Assembly (NCBI GenBank): GCA_965644315.1
Contig: CBFFRQ010000046.1
Location: 1-64,000 of the forward strand
DNA from: Caecitellus pseudoparvulus
Lineage: Eukaryota > Protista > Bigyra: Bicosoecida
Length of the DNA stretch: 64,000 nt
Reading direction: 5' to 3'
The position numbers and the translations under genes are program-made. The notes below the pieces were generated by a model. It made no database searches. It saw only the letters and a program-made list of their open reading frames with translations, and was not told where the DNA came from. Of this stretch, positions 1 through 13,175 are shown piece after piece (the stretch's first letter is position 1; every line of letters begins with the position of its first letter).

Positions 1-341
1 AGGGCAAATGTAGGACAAACTGATATAAGGTCTAGCACTATGCTCAACATTCTTAGAGCAATTTTGCGTTCTTGGAGGTTTTGCGCAACAAGACCCGGCG
101 GGGGGGCTTCGCCAAAATTCAAATACTTCAAATTTGAGTTTTTTGTTTGATGGTGCCGTTGGCCGTTGGCGTTACGGGCACCGAAAGAAAACGGCCAATC
201 ACCCAAGGCCGTCTACCTCTTTCAGAATAAGCGCTGGCTCAAAAATTTCACGCAATTCATGGCCAACCTCAAGCTTTCTCATAACTTCCGCCATTTGTTC
301 GCCCGGTTTCCTCTTCCAAGCCGAATTCTCACCCAGTGGTG

Positions 342-2545
342 ATGGCGACGAAACGAGACCGATCCGGCGCCCCGTTGCGAACGGCCACAGCTGTCCCGGA
401 AAGGTCGTCACGCGGAATAGCTCAAGGAATTCTTGAAGCAAGTGCCCACATGATGAACCTTGGTGCGGCCTCACTTGTCACAGGGCAGTCGTTGCTTGTA
501 CACTCGGTGCATGCCTTGGCAGGCCAGCTTCGAGCCGAAGGCTACACCCGCAGGGATCAGCGGGAAGCGAAGTTCGGAGCAGCAAAAGGCAGAGGTAGGC
601 TTCGTAGGATCAAGCCACTTGTCATTCGCCAGTCTATTGAAGCGACGCTGCAGAACCCGAGGCACTGTTGGAGGTTAACGGGGATGAACGCAGAGATGTA
701 CAGGCACTTCTCTGACGAAGTCCAGAGAGCTCTCGTAAAGGCCAAAAACATGCAAACCAAGCAGCACTCAGCCTTTGTACGGATTTTCATTTGCATTTCC
801 CAGCTCCGTGGGCACCCTCCTGCCGCTCTGGCGATCATTACGAAGATGCCGGAAGGATCTATGCATGGGATCTTCCGGGAGGTGATTCCCTTCGTCCTCT
901 CTGTTGCCACCAGAAATTTGATGCTCAAGATACCCGAAGATCAGCGGGACGTGTCTCACGGGATTTTTGGCGGCGCACTTGGCCGTGTTGTCGGGGCAGT
1001 GGATGGGGTAACCATCCCGATGCAAGCGATGCCGGGCCGACCCCAATCCCACTACAACGTCCACCACAAGATTCCAGGTTACGACTTCCTGCTTGTGACA
1101 GACCTCACTGGAGTTCCCTTGGCTATTTTTGAGATGGGGCCTGGATCACAGTCTGAAGTTGCGGCGGCGTCAGACGCGGTGCGAACCCTGCGCCGCCATG
1201 GAGTCATGGAGCCAGGCGATCTGCTGCTAGGAGATGCATTGTACTGGCACTCCAACAAGCACATTGTAGCGGGAGACAAGCCATCCCACCTCAAACAGTG
1301 GGCCGACAAGATCACCCAGCACATTGAGGCTGGGTGGGAGGATGCCGAAGAGCTCGAGAGGCTGCGCATGGCGTCTGGGATGCTGCTTAGCTTGGATCTG
1401 CGAACGGAGATGATAAGCAGCGCAAGGCTTGTAGTGGAGAACTGCAACAACGTCATCAAGTCGTTCAATGGTAGGTTGAGCGAAAGACACTCACAGATGC
1501 CGTTCCTCGCAGACCAAAAGGCACTTCTGCTCTTGACGGTCAAGGCGGTCACAGGTCTTGTTGCATTTCGGATGCTTTACACTCGTCGCAGCCTCCGAAG
1601 CGAGTCATGGCTGCTTCGAAAGAATCACTCGTTGAGCTTGCTCCATCTCACTGTAAAGGCCGACCGTGCATTAGGGGAGGCAGCAGATCGCACATTTGAA
1701 GACCTGCCCCGACTGATGCAAGTCCGGCGCAACAAGCGACCCATGAAGGTGGCTTATCAGGCCGTTGCCAAAGCTGTGCGTGATGCACAAGGGGAATCTG
1801 CGCCTGAGGTTGAAGCCCAGCCCCCTCGCGGGGCCTCGTCAGAGCTTTGGGAGCAGATCCAAACCATGACGACGCTGCTCCATGGACTTGATCGCGAGGT
1901 GCTGCAGGACCTGGACCAAGGGGGCTTGTCATCCTTGAAGAAGAGGAGCAAGAAGCCCGGCACAGCATCTGCTGTGCCGGGTCAACCCCGTCATACACGG
2001 AGTCGAGGCAGTGCACAACAGGAAGTCATGCCACGACTGCGAAAGTGGTTTCACGGGATGGTCCTTCGGCAAAACGAACCTCTCATGTACTCGGGGGGTC
2101 ACAACCCGAGCGAGGCTACGCAGTGTTGGTCCACCCCTACACCGCAATGTGGGAGGTGTACTACTACCACGAGGATGGAACCGAGGAACAAGAGCTGCAC
2201 TCCTCGGGAGCAGCGACGCACTTGTACAACACACTCCCTCTGATCGCAGAGAGGTTGGCATTGGACAAGAACTGCACTCCAGTGGAGCTTAGCCTGTTGC
2301 AGTGTCCGGGATCTGGTTTGGAGGACAGCCCGCTCGTGGAGTTTGCGTCTGGACTTCTCCTTGAGGGTGACCCTTGTCTGGACCCGGACTCGATAGCGCG
2401 GATGACCATCGACCAGCTTCGCCAACGATGTGAAGAAACGGGGTTGTCTTGCATTGGTACGAGGGGCGACCTCGTTCACCGGCTGACACTTTCCTGCGCT
2501 TCGCAAGGCACAGCCACGGCAGCGGGATCTGCCCTACCGAAGTGA
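342..2545 (+). CDS. PIF/Harbinger-superfamily (DDE_Tnp_4) transposase, apparently continuing via a -1 shift near 2093-2098 into a C-terminal SAP domain
   Basis: ORF 336..2243 (ATG 342) has the catalytic motifs GAVDG (D at 1002), LLLGDALY (D at 1233) and SSARLVVENC (E at 1437), typical of DDE_Tnp_4. Overlapping ORF 2045..2545 ends in MTIDQLRQRCEETGLSCIGTRGDLVHRL, a SAP consensus. One extra G in the G6 run joins the two frames. Confidence 0.85.
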
Positions 2546-2714
2546 GCTCGAGGACACCACCCCTCTCAATGGTGTCTTCCCCCTGGCCCACCCGGCAGCG
2601 TGCATTGATCAGCAAAGCCGTGTCTCGCTCCTGTTCCCTCCTCTGATCACCATACACAACAAATACAATGACTTTACACTCGGGACGGAAGGAGTGAAAG
2701 GTGTGTCCCCTGGA

Positions 2715-3806
2715 TCATGCAAGACGAGCCTCTATCCGTGTCACTGCTTGCTCGATCGACGTCATCCTGTCCAAGAGCTGGACAAGAGCCTCCTTCAGAG
2801 TGTCGTGCATGCGTTGAGAGTCCCTTGACACATCGAAGCACTCTTTTGCTTGTTGGGCAGCCTTTCGAAGCACTGCAGCGCTGTGAAACAGACCGCTTGG
2901 GTCACTGCCGCGGTTTCCAGCATTGCGTCTTGATGCTGAAGCCTCAGTTGCTTGTGCTACTGCTGCGATTGCAGCGTCTTGCTCCTCAAGAGACAGAGCG
3001 GTCTCGACAGACAAGAAGGGGACTGCCGCGGGGTCGATCTGACATGCCGCCTCAGTAAGTTCATCAACCAGCGTATCAGCAATGTTGCTAGGGGTACCCG
3101 CCTGTCCCGGGCTTGGGGTCTGAGCTCCTCGAACCGATTTGGACCGTGGTCGATCGAGGGCCGGGGACGTACGCTGACGCTTCCGTCGGCTTCGCTCAAG
3201 CTTTGGGTTCACGCGAACAGCCATGCGCACCACTGAATGGTAACGAATGTACCCGAAAGCTGCTGCGAAGCGTGCAACTTCTTCACTTCCCGGAGTCAGG
3301 GTGGGGCCAAGGCACGGACCTGAGTGAGCCTCCTGGTTGTGAACATGTACCCGCAGCAAGGCTGAAAATGGGAGCAATGCTGGATCAGAAGGGCATTTAG
3401 TTGGATCCTCTGGGAATGCCACGGCTGGATTTTCCACTGCATGCTCTGCAAGAAGCTCAAGGGCCTGGATGGCTTCCTTGAGTCCCCGTCGCAGTCTGCC
3501 CTTCAATTGCAGGTTGTGGAAAGTCCTCTGTACAGACTTCCCGTTCTTGCGGTCTGCCAAGAAAGCTGACAACTTTGCTTGGGCATGTGCAGCAGACCAG
3601 TACAGCCCTGCAGGGCCCACGTTTCCCTCTGTTGGAACGCCAAGGTATGCAGCTGCATGCTCAGGCCGCACCAGCCATGAAACGCCACCGGGGACGTCCA
3701 CGGTTCCGGCTCCCGCGCTGATCAATCGCTCCAAGAACTTGATAAACTGGGTCTTTTCTGCAGCTTTATGCGGAAGAGCATCGACAAGGGACCCACCTTC
3801 GTCCAT
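2715..3806 (-). CDS. Putative transposon partner protein (ORF2): NLS, C-terminal coiled coil, possible N-terminal winged-helix
   Basis: Intronless 363-aa ORF convergent with the transposase, as in two-gene Harbinger elements. Basic RSRRKRQR motif; heptad C-terminus LVQLLDRMTSIEQAVTRIEARLA. Confidence 0.65.
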   Translation of the reverse strand: MDEGGSLVDALPHKAAEKTQFIKFLERLISAGAGTVDVPGGVSWLVRPEHAAAYLGVPTEGNVGPAGLYWSAAHAQAKLSAFLADRKNGKSVQRTFHNLQLKGRLRRGLKEAIQALELLAEHAVENPAVAFPEDPTKCPSDPALLPFSALLRVHVHNQEAHSGPCLGPTLTPGSEEVARFAAAFGYIRYHSVVRMAVRVNPKLERSRRKRQRTSPALDRPRSKSVRGAQTPSPGQAGTPSNIADTLVDELTEAACQIDPAAVPFLSVETALSLEEQDAAIAAVAQATEASASRRNAGNRGSDPSGLFHSAAVLRKAAQQAKECFDVSRDSQRMHDTLKEALVQLLDRMTSIEQAVTRIEARLA

Positions 3807-4247
3807 TTTCTTCTCCAGCCAGCTTGAGGCAATCTAGGCGTTTCATTTGAAACGGGTTTGTGGGGTACCACACCTACAGCAGCAAGATCCAGCGCCAAAA
3901 CTCACTGCGAAAAGGGTCAGTACAACGTCATCTGGGACTGGGACTCCTCTGGGTTTTACGATTCCGCGTTGTACGGCATCCTGTTGGCCATTCGGGGTTG
4001 TTGAGTGGGGTTGGGAACCATGCTGGCTCCCGCCAGCCGGATGGGCGGCCATCTGGAAAGAATCCAAGCCAAAACTAAAGTCCGTAGTACTGGGATAAGT
4101 TGTGCAGCTTTTAGTATGCTCTGAGTTGGATTTGAGTGAAGTATCATTTTATTCCTGCAAACCGATTTCCGCAATTCTCACTTGCCAATCACTACGACCT
4201 ACAGCAAAACCTGCATCAGGCTGGCGAGTGCAAGCGATTGATTCCGC

Positions 4248-5468
4248 ATGAAGTACATATCGATCAGTTTTTGGTGGGGTTCCCAACTCAAATATCCCAA
4301 GAATCCTCATTTCGCCATTTCTGATATAAGCCTGAACTCCTACAGTAGTCAATCAGCAATTTCTTACTGTAAGGTTTCACGAGACCTAGCTGTTGGCAGC
4401 TTGCCCCTTTCAGATGTTGATACGTTGGGTGCGCACCTGTCTCAGCTGCGAGCCATACTGCTGGCACGAGAAGTCACGCTTGGGCGAGCATTCTGGAACA
4501 GGAAGGGCTTCTTCATCCTTGGTGGAACTCTAGTTGCGGTGGCGCTTGGTTTGGTGCAGATCATGTGGTGGGAGTTCGAGTTCCAGCAAGCTTCACGGGC
4601 AGAGGCGCGGCGTGTGGGTACACCATACGCTGAAGGCTTGCGGGTGCAGCTCATCAAATCTGTGGCAGCTGCGTACACAGTTGCAAGCCTCTTTTCAGCT
4701 AGCGATGGCTTGGCCCGCGAAGCATGGGAACAGTTCGATTCCCTGGCAGGCACGTTACGCTCAACGTACGGCGGCATTAGTAACTTACAGCTGGCACCCT
4801 GTGCAGTTGTGACAAAGATATCTCCTCTGGCTGGAAACGAGGGAGCAATTGGGTACAGGCTTCTGGAAGACCCCGACCCCAAGAAGGTCAAAGCAGCCAT
4901 CGACACGATTGTCGCTCGGCGCCTAACATTTGTCGGCCCTCTCAGCCTCATCCAAGGTGGCACTGCCATTATTGGCCGGTATCCAGTCTTTACATCCCAG
5001 CCAAACAACTGCACCTACCAGACTCCTGGTGTCCCGACAAACTTTTGGGGCTACGCAAGTATGCTCACTACCATTGACGATTTGCTCTCGGGCATGTCCC
5101 TGGGGCAGCTCTCAAAAGACGGATTTGACTACGCCATCACAGCTCCTGGGTGGGGACCACTCGTCGGCACCCCCCACCCTTCTGCAGAAACGATTCCCAT
5201 TGACTTTGCGGACGGGACAGACTTTGTCTTTGCATCATGGAGCCTCCACATCATGCCGAGAGCTGGCTGGCCACCAACCAGCCCAACTCTTCCTTGGAAA
5301 CTTATCAGCCTCGTCCTTGCATGTCTCAGCGGCATCTTCACATCATATGCGCTGCTCTACCGTAGTATTGTACTGGGCCGAGCATTAGCGTTCATCGATG
5401 CTCTGATGGAAGCCGCTGCTCAAGGAGCAACCAACCGCTCATCCTCCAAGAGAGCATCAAGTACCTGA
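4248..5468 (+). CDS. CHASE-domain membrane protein with two TM helices and no cytoplasmic output domain
   Basis: TM1 FFILGGTLVAVALGLVQIMWW; CHASE motifs LQLAPCAVVTKISPLAGNEGAIG, GPLSLIQGGTAIIGRYPVF, FWGYASM; TM2 LISLVLACLSGIFTSYALL; stop ~35 aa later. Start uncertain (possible in-frame intron 4369..4413). Confidence 0.8.
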   Translation: MKYISISFWWGSQLKYPKNPHFAISDISLNSYSSQSAISYCKVSRDLAVGSLPLSDVDTLGAHLSQLRAILLAREVTLGRAFWNRKGFFILGGTLVAVALGLVQIMWWEFEFQQASRAEARRVGTPYAEGLRVQLIKSVAAAYTVASLFSASDGLAREAWEQFDSLAGTLRSTYGGISNLQLAPCAVVTKISPLAGNEGAIGYRLLEDPDPKKVKAAIDTIVARRLTFVGPLSLIQGGTAIIGRYPVFTSQPNNCTYQTPGVPTNFWGYASMLTTIDDLLSGMSLGQLSKDGFDYAITAPGWGPLVGTPHPSAETIPIDFADGTDFVFASWSLHIMPRAGWPPTSPTLPWKLISLVLACLSGIFTSYALLYRSIVLGRALAFIDALMEAAAQGATNRSSSKRASST

Positions 5469-8132
5469 AGTGGACATACCAACAATGCAAGCACCTACTC
5501 CAACTAAGCTAACAATACTTACCCAGTGAATACTTGAGCGAATCTTTGCCGGCAAGTGCCTATGAATAGGTCGTCATACATGCAACGGCATTCTCATTCA
5601 AACTCAAAACAAGCCTCTTTCCATACCAGGAAAGAACAACGATACTGGAACAATCCTGGGTTCAGCAAGACCCGTGCAGGAAACATGATGGTAGGAAACA
5701 CTTAAAATTCTCGTTTCTGGCGCTTGTCACACCTGTCTGGACTGCGTTCCTCGACGCATATTGTGGTAGTCTACCGAAGAGCAATGTCGACTTTCCTGCT
5801 TCATTCTGCAGGGCATTTGACTGAAGAGGGCTTGCTTTACCCTTCGGGATTTCCGCCTGGCATAAAGAGGAATAAAAATATGCTGGGACAAAGCACTCTA
5901 TCAAGAATGGAAAGCAAGATAACACGCCTCGCTTTCGTTGCGGCTCCAGTACACGTGTGCTATAGTCAAACGTGATGGCTGACTCACTACGTCAGAAAGC
6001 AAGCATTGTTTAATGAGCAAACACTTCGGCAATGAGCCTTTCTGGTTTGGTTGACGATACCATGGAACACTCTTTGTTGCCCTCTTACACATGTACATAC
6101 ATGAACACAACAATGTACCTTTCAGACTTAAACTATCTACAAGTCGATTGCAGCCTATCTGAAAGAATACAGAAGAATGAATAACTCTTGCTTCCTTTTT
6201 CATTTGGCATCCTCGCAAACAAAAAGCACATTGCCATACTGTGAGAGGAAAGTGGACTGAACTTGAAGTGCACAATTTGAAGAACCGATCCTTAAATCTG
6301 CAAGCATTTCGTCCCCCAATCTCCTTTTCAACTCATCAGTACTAGCTTTCAAACGTTCGCAGCTACATGTCTCACAATCCTCCGTACCGTGCACGGCAGT
6401 TCACATTACTCAAGTCCTGCAGCCTTCATCAACGTGTCAGAAAATGAAGACACCCCTGTTCATAAATTGGCTGACACATACGGTATCAATGTTCGTTTAG
6501 TATTCCCTTCGGCGATATGCAGAAGTTTCACCTCACTCTATGCTTTTTTAGAAGAAATGCGGGATTTAACGTGCTTTGAGGCATAATGAACCAGGAATGT
6601 CAAACTTCAAAGAAACCTCAACATTGTTATCCCTACGAAAATGCAAGGTTTTTTCTGTATGGTCGACTTGAACCGAGTGTTTTGTATGGGATACAAGTGT
6701 AAAAGCACGGAAGCGGTTGTCTGTATCCAAGACTATGAGCTGGAAACGTTATCAACGCTAGACTGAAACAGCTCCCACGAGAGCTCAATTGTTTTAAGAG
6801 GTTCGAGACTAGCAATGGCCAAGATCGTTAACGTATCAAGAAGCTTTGCAAACAATGCACCTCTTGAAGAACCTCTGGCGAGTTCAAAACTTTGGATTTG
6901 CAGCCTGAAAAATAACAAACAAAAGAACCTGCCAGTATACAAAGCACAGAATTTGAATGTATAAAGCAACGGTTCTTATTGCCCCACTTCCGATGCCAAC
7001 ATACTCATCCACGCTGAACAATGTGAGACTCTTTTGGTGACGATAAACTTCTACGGCTACCTTCCTTGCAGAATCTGCCCAAGTGGAGTGTCCCAATTCG
7101 GTAAGAACGCCATATCTCTGACTGATGTGATACAATCTCAGCAAGGGATACAATACTACATCTGTACAATGAGCTTGTCCCCATATCGAGGGAGCGTTGC
7201 GGGGTTTCTCTTAAATGTGTGATCATAGGTAGGAATTTTGACTTGAGATGGACAAGCATGTACTTTTAATGGCGTGAAGGTTGTCCTTTCCCGTAGCAAT
7301 GTGTTCCTCTTTAGGGATGTAGAACATTCTGTACATTTCCTTGGCGTTTATCTGGGAGAACGATGCGATCCTAGAAACGGGTAATTCTCGTTTTGTGTAC
7401 AACACCATTTCCTTGCATCAAATCTCTCGTTCTTTCATGGAATCAGTGTCGCAGGGTTGCAATGATAAGAGTATTTCTGAAGAATGCCCTTGACAATCCT
7501 CTACTCATTGCAGTACCACGTACACCGACAGTTCTCCCTAGATAATCTGACTTGGTCTCCCATTTTCTGAATGGTTGTCAGTATTCGCTGCAAGATCAAG
7601 GGGCCAGTTTTGCAGTTCACACTGCGTGTGTCCTGAATTCATGACGGTTGTACGAAGCGCTCAGGATGTGCATGAAATTCATGTCCAATCCCAGCCCTAC
7701 GGTAATGCAGAATGCTCCGGAAAGACGTCATTTGTTGTCAGATCATAGTTTCTTAGGATCGGTGGCAGCGTGCAGTGTTTAGGTGCCTTGAAGTTTATCG
7801 GGCATGTGATAGTGTAAGGCTCTCGGTTAAGATTCTGAACCAATTGTGCGATGGTCATCTGCAGAGTACACACAGGCTTTCATTGGCACACTTGTGAAGC
7901 ACAAGAGCGTGGGTGACCTCCCAAGAAACGTAGGGGATGTGTGTGGACAGGGGATCTCTGCCAATTGAGACGCAAGTGTTCTGCGAGAGATCCGTGCTAG
8001 CCTTGGCGAAGGGTGGAGAGGGTGCATGTGCCAAATTTGCTGCATTGACAATGACTGGCTGCCGAGGGCAGTTGTTGAGTGGCGCCATGAGAAGCCATCC
8101 TACGTGGTATGCAGGCTGTGGTGCCGTGTTTC

Positions 8133-11575: not shown

Positions 11576-13175
11576 ATGTACAATGGCATTGGTCTGCGAA
11601 CTGCGCGAGGCAGTGGCACAAATGGCTATGTGACCAAGAACTTTGGCTATGTGCGCCCTGACATTGTTCGCGCAAAGACCACCCAGGCAGACCGGGACCA
11701 CGAGAGGCTTCGCACTCGTGCACACGATCCAAAGATTTTAGAGCATGAGCTGCGGCGGCAAGTCAAGGTGAAGGTCATGGAGCTACGAGAGGCCATGGAG
11801 CGCAAAGGGTAAGGATGAAATGTGAAACGCTCATGCTGCAGCAAATGCCTTGCGCTGTGACGCCAACCATGCGCGGTGACTACCCACGGTATTTCCTGTA
11901 TTATGTTGCAGAGTAGCGGAAGAATCTATCCTTTCCAAGTGTGAGGAGTTGCGCCGTCGCCTACTGCAAGAGTTGCAAGAGAACCGACAGCGTTTCACCC
12001 ATGCCACTGGCGTGGGTGCTGACAGCCGAACGGCTGCAGCAGCTTCGAAGGCGGAAGCCAACGAGAAGATGCGCAGAGCTCTCGCTGTCCCGGATGACTA
12101 CACTGCTGGCGAGGCGTTTGATGCTGATGCCGTTGCCCGGCGCAAGGAGCACAGGCGCATGCGACGTGAGCACATGCGCCGCGAAAGGGAGGGTGCCCGA
12201 AGGTGGGGCGGCCGAGACGGGCGTGGACGAGGCACAAGTCCCCCTCGCCGCCGGTGGGGCTATGATCGAGAGGACTCAAGGCGAGGGCGGCACCGATCTC
12301 GCTCGCCTTCACCTGACGGCACGTGGGGCGGTGAACGTGCACGGGGTCGGCGTGGGGCGTCCGTGTCCCGGAGTCCGCCTCGGGGTCGGCGTGGGGCGTC
12401 CGTGTCCCGGAGTCCGCCTCGGGGTCGGCGTGGGGCGTCCGTGTCCCGGAGTCCGCCTCGGGGTCGGCGTGGGGCGTCCGTGTCCCGGAGTCCACCTCGG
12501 GGTCGGCGTGGGGCGTCCGTGTCCCGGAGTCCGCCTCGGGGTCGGCGTGGGGCGTCCGTGTCCCGGAGTCCGCCTCGGGGTCGGCGTGGGGCGTCTGTGT
12601 CCCGGAGTCCGCCTCGGGGTCGGCGTGGGGCGTCTGTGTCCCGGAGTCCGCCTCGGGGTCGGCGTGGGGCGTCCGTGTCCCGGAGTCCGCCTCGGGGTCG
12701 GCGTGGGGCGTCCGTGTCCCGGAGTCCCCCTCGGGGTCGGCGTGGGGCGTCCGTGTCCCGGAGTCCGCCTCGGGGTCGGCGTGGGGCGTCTGTGTCCCGG
12801 AGTCCGCCTCGGGGTCGGCATGGGGCGTCCGTGTCCCGGAGTCCACCTCGGGGTCGGCGTGGGGCGTCCGTGTCCCGGAGTCCGCCTCGGGGTCGGCGTG
12901 GGGCGTCCGTGTCCCGGAGTCCACCTCGGGGTCGGCGTGGGGCGTCCGTGTCCCGGAGTCCGCCTCGGGGTCGGCGTGGGGCGTCCGTGTCCCGGAGTCC
13001 ACCTCGGGGTCGGCGTAGTCGCTGGGGGGGTGAGCAGGCTGTCGCGCCTGCAGCGTCTTCACGCCCCGCGCCTGCGCTTCGAGGCGTTAGTTCGGCGCAG
13101 GCTGCAGCTGCTCAGCGTGGGGCAGGGCGTGGCAGGGCTGCGACAGTGCCTGCCTGGGCGGTCAAGGGCAGGTAG
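11576..13175 (+). CDS. CWC21: Pre-mRNA splicing factor CWC21 / SRRM2-like; intron 11809-11911
   Basis: Hallmark N-terminus MYNGIGLRTARGSGTNGYV, cwf21 helix ILEHELRRQVKVKVMELRE, GEAFD motif and RS-rich tail. A 103-nt GT-AG intron joins the two ORFs in frame. Confidence 0.93.
12342..13016 (+). repeat. Coding minisatellite: 17 full copies plus a partial copy of a 39-bp unit encoding RGRRGASVSRSPP
   Basis: Unit cggggtcggcgtggggcgtccgtgtcccggagtccgcct recurs every 39 nt from 12342 (18th start at 13005) with no spacers. Confidence 0.97.

What the first reader, a model, noticed from the sequence alone, without database searches (positions are those of the whole stretch)
342..3806. Harbinger-type transposon with a SAP-tailed transposase and a non-Myb, possibly winged-helix partner
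Seen: intact D-D-E DDE_Tnp_4 motifs, a long C-terminal extension ending in a SAP motif, and a convergent intronless 363-aa ORF with an NLS and terminal coiled coil. Known: canonical PIF/Harbinger elements pair the transposase with a Myb/SANT (trihelix) protein, while other PHIS lineages use THAP, YqaJ or other partners. Inference: the ORF2 N-terminus (QFIKFLERLIS..VSW..LSAFLADRKNGKS..TFHNL..LRRGL) looks more like an HSF/ETS-style winged helix than a Myb domain. The SAP-transposase plus wHTH-partner pairing could be an undescribed PHIS lineage with its own targeting mechanism.
Basis: partly seen in the sequence, partly recalled or inferred. Interest (0 to 1): 0.8.

Follow-up and report, generated by a model that had tools for sequence, protein, structure and literature searches.

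The report
Active Harbinger-like transposon with 5-bp scars
This is a very recently active 4.4-kb jumping gene of a marine microbial eukaryote, a distant Harbinger relative that leaves 5-base insertion scars (the reviews I read give 0, 2 or 3 for this group) and belongs to a small lineage I could not find described.

Summary
Window 1-4388 is one copy, minus its first 24 bases, of a 4,412/4,413-bp two-gene DNA transposon. The assembly holds nine near-full copies; the six complete ones are identical but for one G. It has 16-bp terminal repeats (TAGGTC...) and 5-bp target duplications in 7 of 7 copies with both ends. For this copy, the left flank and an empty allele in other samples confirm 5 bp. 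The intact transposase has 734 aa; in the window a G6/G7 slip splits it (probably a long-read error). It belongs to a small, sharply bounded clade (15 sequences here, support 100/99) marked by a long transposase with an unclassified ~100-aa C-terminal domain and a convergent non-Myb partner. SAP occurs in only 1 of 15, so it is a private add-on. The winged-helix idea is unsupported: no HSF/ETS/Myb hit, the motifs are not conserved, and a low-confidence model is all-helical. Non-Myb partners are already known (Pangu, PHISTA). The new traits are scar length, the C-terminal domain and deep divergence. Labelled Repbase references were not available. The scan had already reported the sister family (4-bp scars) on other DNA of this genome.

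The parts
1..4388 (+). Transposon copy, lacking the first 24 nt (left TIR) at the contig start; full length 4,412/4,413 bp
342..2545 (+). Transposase gene, 734 aa in G7 copies; split into 633 aa plus a second frame in this G6 copy
642..926 (+). Helical N-terminal region (aa ~101-195), probable HTH that binds the element ends (inferred)
   Evidence: model; weak sigma-4-type HTH matches, Z about 5; HTH_23 in sister family B
1002..1439 (+). DDE catalytic core: D221 (1002-1004), D298 (1233-1235), E366 (1437-1439)
   Evidence: Tn5 transposase is the top structural match, Z 6.0
2049..2335 (+). Clade-wide beta-rich C-terminal domain (aa ~570-665), no Pfam or PDB match; crosses the G-run
2093..2098 (+). 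G6 run; G7 in three assembled copies and in two other samples, where the frame is open
2396..2488 (+). SAP motif, found only in this family
2715..3806 (-). ORF2, 363 aa, convergent partner without a known domain; conserved core aa 1-215 (3162-3806)
3171..3188 (-). RRKRQR basic cluster, candidate nuclear-localisation signal; basic in orthologues too
4373..4388 (-). Right terminal inverted repeat, 16 bp perfect (TAGGTCTCGTGAAACC)
4389..4393 (+). 5-bp target-site duplication GCTGT; the other copy ends contig C40; single in the empty allele
4389..5468 (+). 3' part of a host CHASE-domain reading frame interrupted by the insertion

Best explanation
An autonomous, very recently amplified cut-and-paste DNA transposon of a divergent lineage related to the PHIS (Harbinger/ISL2EU/Spy) group. 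Shown: two convergent genes, 16-bp TIRs, 5-bp duplications with a loose n-Y-W-R-n preference, identical copies at unrelated sites, an internally deleted derivative, and a filled versus empty site. Inferred from Harbinger biology: the 734-aa transposase binds the ends through its N-terminal helical region, cuts with its D221-D298-E366 core, and joins the ends to target strands 5 bp apart. ORF2 is an obligate helper that binds the transposase, escorts it into the nucleus through its basic cluster and helps assemble the ends, the role of the Myb-like protein in Harbinger, but with an unrecognised, probably all-helical domain. The conserved C-terminal domain most likely contacts target DNA or chromatin; SAP is a late, family-specific extra DNA tether.
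For: Copies, TIR and TSD. Empty site and left flank. Clade: 15 hits at E<1e-10 among 1.84 billion representatives, then a drop to E~1e-7 for ordinary DDE_Tnp_4 proteins; tree support 100/99. A convergent second gene in every intact relative for which DNA was fetched. ORF2 similarity follows transposase kinship. The three closest families share TAGGTC ends, and one shows CTGGT at a left end and at a right end in separate assemblies. The YWR core sits at positions 2-4 in 8 of 10 relatives' flanks. C-terminal domain in all full-length members and found only at transposase loci in this genome.
Against: No labelled Repbase references in the tree, so nesting inside Pangu/Harbinger2/HarbingerS is not excluded, and long branches can cluster artificially. 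No RNA run was found. ORF2 and C-terminal-domain functions rest on analogy. Both structure models are low-confidence (pLDDT 54). Sister family E appears to make 4-bp scars (one case seen here), so 5 bp is not clade-wide.
Confidence: 0.75

Rival explanations
1. A long-branched offshoot of Pangu/Harbinger2 (or HarbingerS) that changed its cut stagger, as hAT5/6/7 did within hAT; a variant, not a separate group.
For: Pangu also has two ORFs, a partner with no known motif, and members in a heterokont and algae (PMC4482050). TSD length varies within superfamilies. Several outgroup branches are unlabelled.
Against: Pangu is defined by 3-bp ANT TSDs, AG/GG ends and a transposase with no extra domain. 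Here the TSD is 5 bp, the ends are TAGG, and a ~100-aa conserved extra domain is present. No outgroup falls within the clade.
Confidence: 0.2
2. One reading: ORF2 is an HSF/ETS-type winged-helix protein, and the SAP-plus-winged-helix pair is the lineage's targeting device.
For: Loose resemblance of the FIKFLERLI...VSW stretch to HSF (by eye); the model is too weak to exclude a fold.
Against: No HSF, ETS or Myb Pfam hit at E<=1 in 11 ORF2 sequences. Trp71 and RRGL are absent in orthologues. No strands in the model. No winged-helix or Myb match in PDB or Atlas fold searches. SAP in 1 of 15.
Confidence: 0.06
3. The G6 run is a programmed -1 frameshift that makes short and long transposase forms.
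For: Six of nine assembled copies and an old 95%-identical copy have G6; run X9 shows no inserted G there.
Against: Three copies and two other samples have an open G7 frame. All relatives with this domain read through. In sister family E a similar G-run indel recurs across three haplotypes at a different protein position. The run from the same organism is full of single-base deletions, like long-read data. A real slippage allele carried by some copies remains possible (about 30%).
Confidence: 0.05

Closest known systems
PIF/Harbinger (canonical)
   Same: DDE_Tnp_4 core, two genes, short TIRs, about 4-4.5 kb; tail-to-tail layout as in Ectocarpus Harbingers (PMC12477816)
   Different: TSD 5 bp not TWA; ORF2 not Myb/SANT; transposase 690-750 aa with an extra C-terminal domain; separate clade
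Pangu / Harbinger2
   Same: Two ORFs, partner without a known motif, short TIRs
   Different: TSD 5-bp nYWRn not 3-bp ANT; ends TAGG not AG/GG; extra transposase domains
NuwaI and NuwaII
   Same: Target core resembles CWG (NuwaI); NuwaII was left ambiguous between 3 bp and 5 bp (C|TNA|G)
   Different: Here five variable bases are duplicated, which is unambiguous; no Myb/SANT partner; ends not GGG/GG
PHISTA (PMC12730594)
   Same: Harbinger-related lineage set apart by TSD and a non-Myb partner
   Different: TA here is part of the element (absent from the empty site), not a TSD; no TET/JBP gene
ISL2EU and Spy
   Same: DDE_Tnp_4 core
   Different: No THAP, no YqaJ partner; TSD neither AT nor absent
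KDZ/Zisupton (own knowledge: SAP-bearing transposases, 8-bp TSD)
   Same: SAP motif on a transposase
   Different: Different catalytic family; TSD 5 bp; SAP private to one family here

Membership tests
PHIS superfamily (broad) | DDE_Tnp_4-type catalytic domain with D-D-E triad | tested here: met
   13 of 15 clade members hit PF13359 at E<=1, best 3.7e-8; all nearest outside DDE hits are DDE_Tnp_4 proteins
PHIS superfamily (broad) | TIRs and (mostly) two ORFs | tested here: met
PHIS superfamily (broad) | TSD of 0, 2 or 3 bp (PMC12730594) | tested here: not met
   5 bp in 7/7 copies with both ends, plus the window copy with an empty site
PIF/Harbinger | TWA 3-bp TSD | tested here: not met
PIF/Harbinger | Myb/SANT partner | tested here: not met
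   no Pfam hit in 11 ORF2s, no fold match; a very divergent tri-helix cannot be fully excluded
Pangu/Harbinger2 | ANT 3-bp TSD | tested here: not met
Pangu/Harbinger2 | Second ORF without a known motif | tested here: met
Pangu/Harbinger2 | Nests in the Pangu clade | not testable with these tools
   no labelled reference sequences available; one search uses unlabelled outgroups
NuwaI/NuwaII | CWG or C|TNA|G TSD, GG(G) ends and Myb/SANT partner | tested here: not met
ISL2EU | AT TSD, THAP domain, YqaJ partner | tested here: not met
   THAP/HTH_Tnp_4 proteins fall outside the clade
Spy | No TSD, single ORF | tested here: not met
Bacterial IS5 family | Match to IS5 models or prokaryotic relatives | tested here: not met
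   no IS hit in NCBIfam; none in plasmids, GTDB contigs or IMG/VR
HSF/ETS winged helix (ORF2) | Three helices plus a beta-sheet wing; HSF or ETS profile match | tested here: inconclusive
   no profile match, no strands, but model pLDDT is 54

The most novel reading that the evidence does not exclude
A separate deep branch of IS5/PHIS-like eukaryotic transposons, of the same rank as Harbinger or ISL2EU, so far seen almost only in marine and saline samples. Sister families would differ in cut stagger (5 bp versus 4 bp) and in terminal bases (TAGG, GG, GGG, TGA), and two folds new to the libraries searched, the transposase C-terminal domain and the ORF2 core, would carry out targeting and end assembly.
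Probability: 0.25. Interest if true: 0.75.

Novelty: new variant of a known kind. Interest (0 to 1): 0.55.

Why it matters
TSD length is the trait by which PHIS groups are told apart, and the reviews read here list only 0, 2 and 3 bp. A family with clean 5-bp scars, next to a sister with apparent 4-bp scars, extends that range and gives closely related, intact, intronless enzymes for asking what sets the stagger and target preference of Harbinger-type transposases. It also offers a natural test of what the second protein does when it is not Myb-like. The copies are identical and one splits a host CHASE-domain reading frame in this strain only, so the element is a current source of mutation in its host and a candidate for a genetic tool in marine protists. 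Standard annotation would miss it: the word-based search found no relatives of the transposase at all.

Tried and rejected
TA as a 2-bp TSD (my first reading): rejected, because five further variable bases are duplicated outside it and the empty allele lacks TA. An intron joining the SAP frame: unnecessary, since G7 copies read through. Word-index protein searches: nothing for the transposase, only near-identical or already-found sequences for ORF2. ESM Atlas feature searches blank for ORF2 and the C-terminal domain. PDB sequence searches blank; a lipoyltransferase hit at E 0.012 is treated as chance. Profile-profile comparison could not link the distant ORF2 groups, so homology of all partners is only suggested by short N-terminal motifs. 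Selection test against the 95% copy: third-position bias in ORF2, too few changes in the SAP frame. Subterminal GAGT-type repeats: weak in this family (p 0.02, pattern chosen after looking), stronger in two relatives; a lead only. Host identification failed. The costly protein search was used once because the word search left the transposase open and the claim rests on absence of relatives.

Full report
Observation. The window opens inside a repeat. A transposase-like ORF starts at 342 and ORF2 runs 3806-2715 on the other strand. Pfam gives DDE_Tnp_4 for the first (E 7.8e-7), nothing for ORF2, and SAP for a separate ORF at 2045-2545. So in the window the SAP motif is not in the transposase frame.

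Element boundaries. Window 1-4388 matches eight further near-full copies, an internally deleted copy, a right-end fragment and a 95%-identical 5'-truncated copy in the 30.6-Mb assembly. Complete copies are 4,412 or 4,413 bp with perfect 16-bp TIRs beginning TAGGTC; the window lacks the first 24 nt. The six complete copies are identical apart from one G, which indicates a very recent burst.

Target duplication. All seven copies with both ends have exactly five variable bases duplicated: TCTGC twice, GTAGG, TTAGT, TGAGA, TCTCG and ACAAG. For the window copy, GCTGT follows the right end; contig C40 ends in GCTGT plus TAG, the first bases of the element; and three other samples carry the empty allele with one GCTGT and no TA. 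Eight of 11 sites fit n-Y-W-R-n against a 10% background. That pattern was derived from these sites, but 8 of 10 flanks of related families fit it too. Han et al. 2015 (PMC4482050) list TWA, AT, none, ANT, CWG and C|TNA|G for the PHIS groups, and Kojima 2025 (PMC12730594) gives 0, 2 or 3 bp for Harbinger relatives. My paper searches found no 5-bp case, but the library is incomplete and Repbase could not be searched.

The frameshift. Three copies have G7 at window 2093-2098 and encode one 734-aa protein ending in SAP. Contigs of two other samples show G7 at full depth, whereas the run from the same organism shows many single-base deletions, typical of long reads. A similar G-run indel recurs across haplotypes in a sister family. 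I read the G6 as most likely an assembly error (about 70%). A real slippage allele is possible, since the old degenerate copy and one other run also lack the extra G.

The clade. The genome holds five more related transposases of 673-754 aa; two of these families have their own TIRs starting GG or GGG. A profile of five of them against 1.84 billion representatives gave 15 hits below 1e-10 and then dropped to ordinary DDE_Tnp_4 proteins at about 1e-7. None of the full-length hits looked up has a useful name. The reads that hold this element come largely from marine samples, and no relative was found among prokaryotic genomes, plasmids or viral contigs. In a tree of the core, 15 clade sequences form one side of a branch (100/99) against 19 outgroups, which include Plant_tran-type Harbinger-like and THAP/HTH_Tnp_4-type ISL2EU-like proteins. 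The outgroups are unlabelled, 9 of 28 candidates were dropped because my motif filter missed them, and branches are long, so placement relative to Pangu is untested. The three closest families group at 100/98 and all end in TAGGTC; one shows CTGGT at a left end and at a right end in separate assemblies. A more distant family ends in GG and shows a 4-bp duplication in the one informative contig, agreeing with an earlier scan report.

Transposase anatomy. The model (pLDDT 54; core 70-88) shows a helical N-terminal region, an RNase H-like core with D221, D298 and E366, a helical region, a disordered linker, and a beta-rich domain at about aa 570-665; Tn5 transposase is the top structural match at a modest Z 6.0. 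The beta-rich domain is present in all full-length members, is found only at transposase loci in this genome, and matches nothing in Pfam, PDB sequences or the Atlas. SAP is present in this family alone. The real lineage marker is therefore the unclassified domain, not SAP.

ORF2. It occurs only inside element copies or their fragments. Every intact relative fetched has a convergent partner of about 300-530 aa. Within the TAGGTC group the first ~235 residues are homologous (E about 1e-8) and end in a conserved basic stretch. None of 11 partner sequences hits Myb, MADF, HSF, ETS or YqaJ models. The residues that suggested HSF/ETS are not conserved, the model is all-helical, and three fold searches gave no meaningful match. 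With pLDDT 54 this weakens but does not formally exclude either a winged helix or a very divergent tri-helix.

Mechanism. Shown: mobility, ends, 5-bp stagger, loose target preference, intact catalytic triad and strict gene pairing. Inferred by analogy with Harbinger, where the Myb-like protein binds the transposase, enables nuclear import and binds the ends (PMC9179366): ORF2 is the escort and assembly partner, the N-terminal helical region recognises the TIR, and the C-terminal domain plus SAP contact target DNA or chromatin. None of these roles was tested.

Verdict. A real, active element that works like a two-component Harbinger but fails the TSD test of every PHIS group described in the papers read. 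It is best filed as an undescribed lineage related to PHIS: a new variant of a known kind, comparable to the naming of PHISTA or hAT5. Interest 0.55: solid and useful for transposon specialists, not a new mechanism so far, and the scan had already flagged the sister family.

Noticed in passing
window 4389-5468 and G000:C40 start: The 'orphan' CHASE ORF is the 3' part of a longer reading frame: the element sits in it, the empty allele reads in frame across the site, and the upstream flank lies at the end of contig C40, which therefore joins this contig through the element.
   Followed up: partly
L042 (G000:C94:158311-161913) and L070: A 709-aa clade member that lacks the catalytic D, D and E but keeps an open frame and the C-terminal domain; a 96%-identical copy with shared flanking DNA exists in a metagenome contig. 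Candidate domesticated transposase.
   Followed up: partly
L032-L041, L071-L073: Sister family E, about 4,540 bp, TIR starting GGTGCGTCACGG, at least ten copies; 4-bp duplication CAAG in L072, and C five bases before the left end in 9 of 10 flanks.
   Followed up: partly
L025, L026: Sister family B, about 4,487 bp, TIR starting GGGTGCCTACCA, two copies; TSD not read.
   Followed up: partly
L011 (G000:C114:39261-41193): 1,937-bp internally deleted copy with intact ends, a 5-bp TSD and an 11-bp microhomology at the deletion joint; a shorter derivative joining about 106 to 4318 appears in run X3.
   Followed up: partly
L010 (G000:C95:137207-140093): Older 95%-identical, 5'-truncated copy with stop codons; the same truncation joint and right flank appear in run X9, so the family has been resident for some time.
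   Followed up: partly
L060-L062, L064-L066: Related elements with TGA...TCA ends; flanks of the L060-L062 family keep the nYWRn pattern.
   Followed up: partly
window 5469-7849: Low-GC (42-46%), ORF-poor tract with no second copy found in the genome by the DNA search.
   Followed up: no
window 12342-13016: Near-perfect 39-bp tandem array of about 17 copies within a coding region.
   Followed up: no
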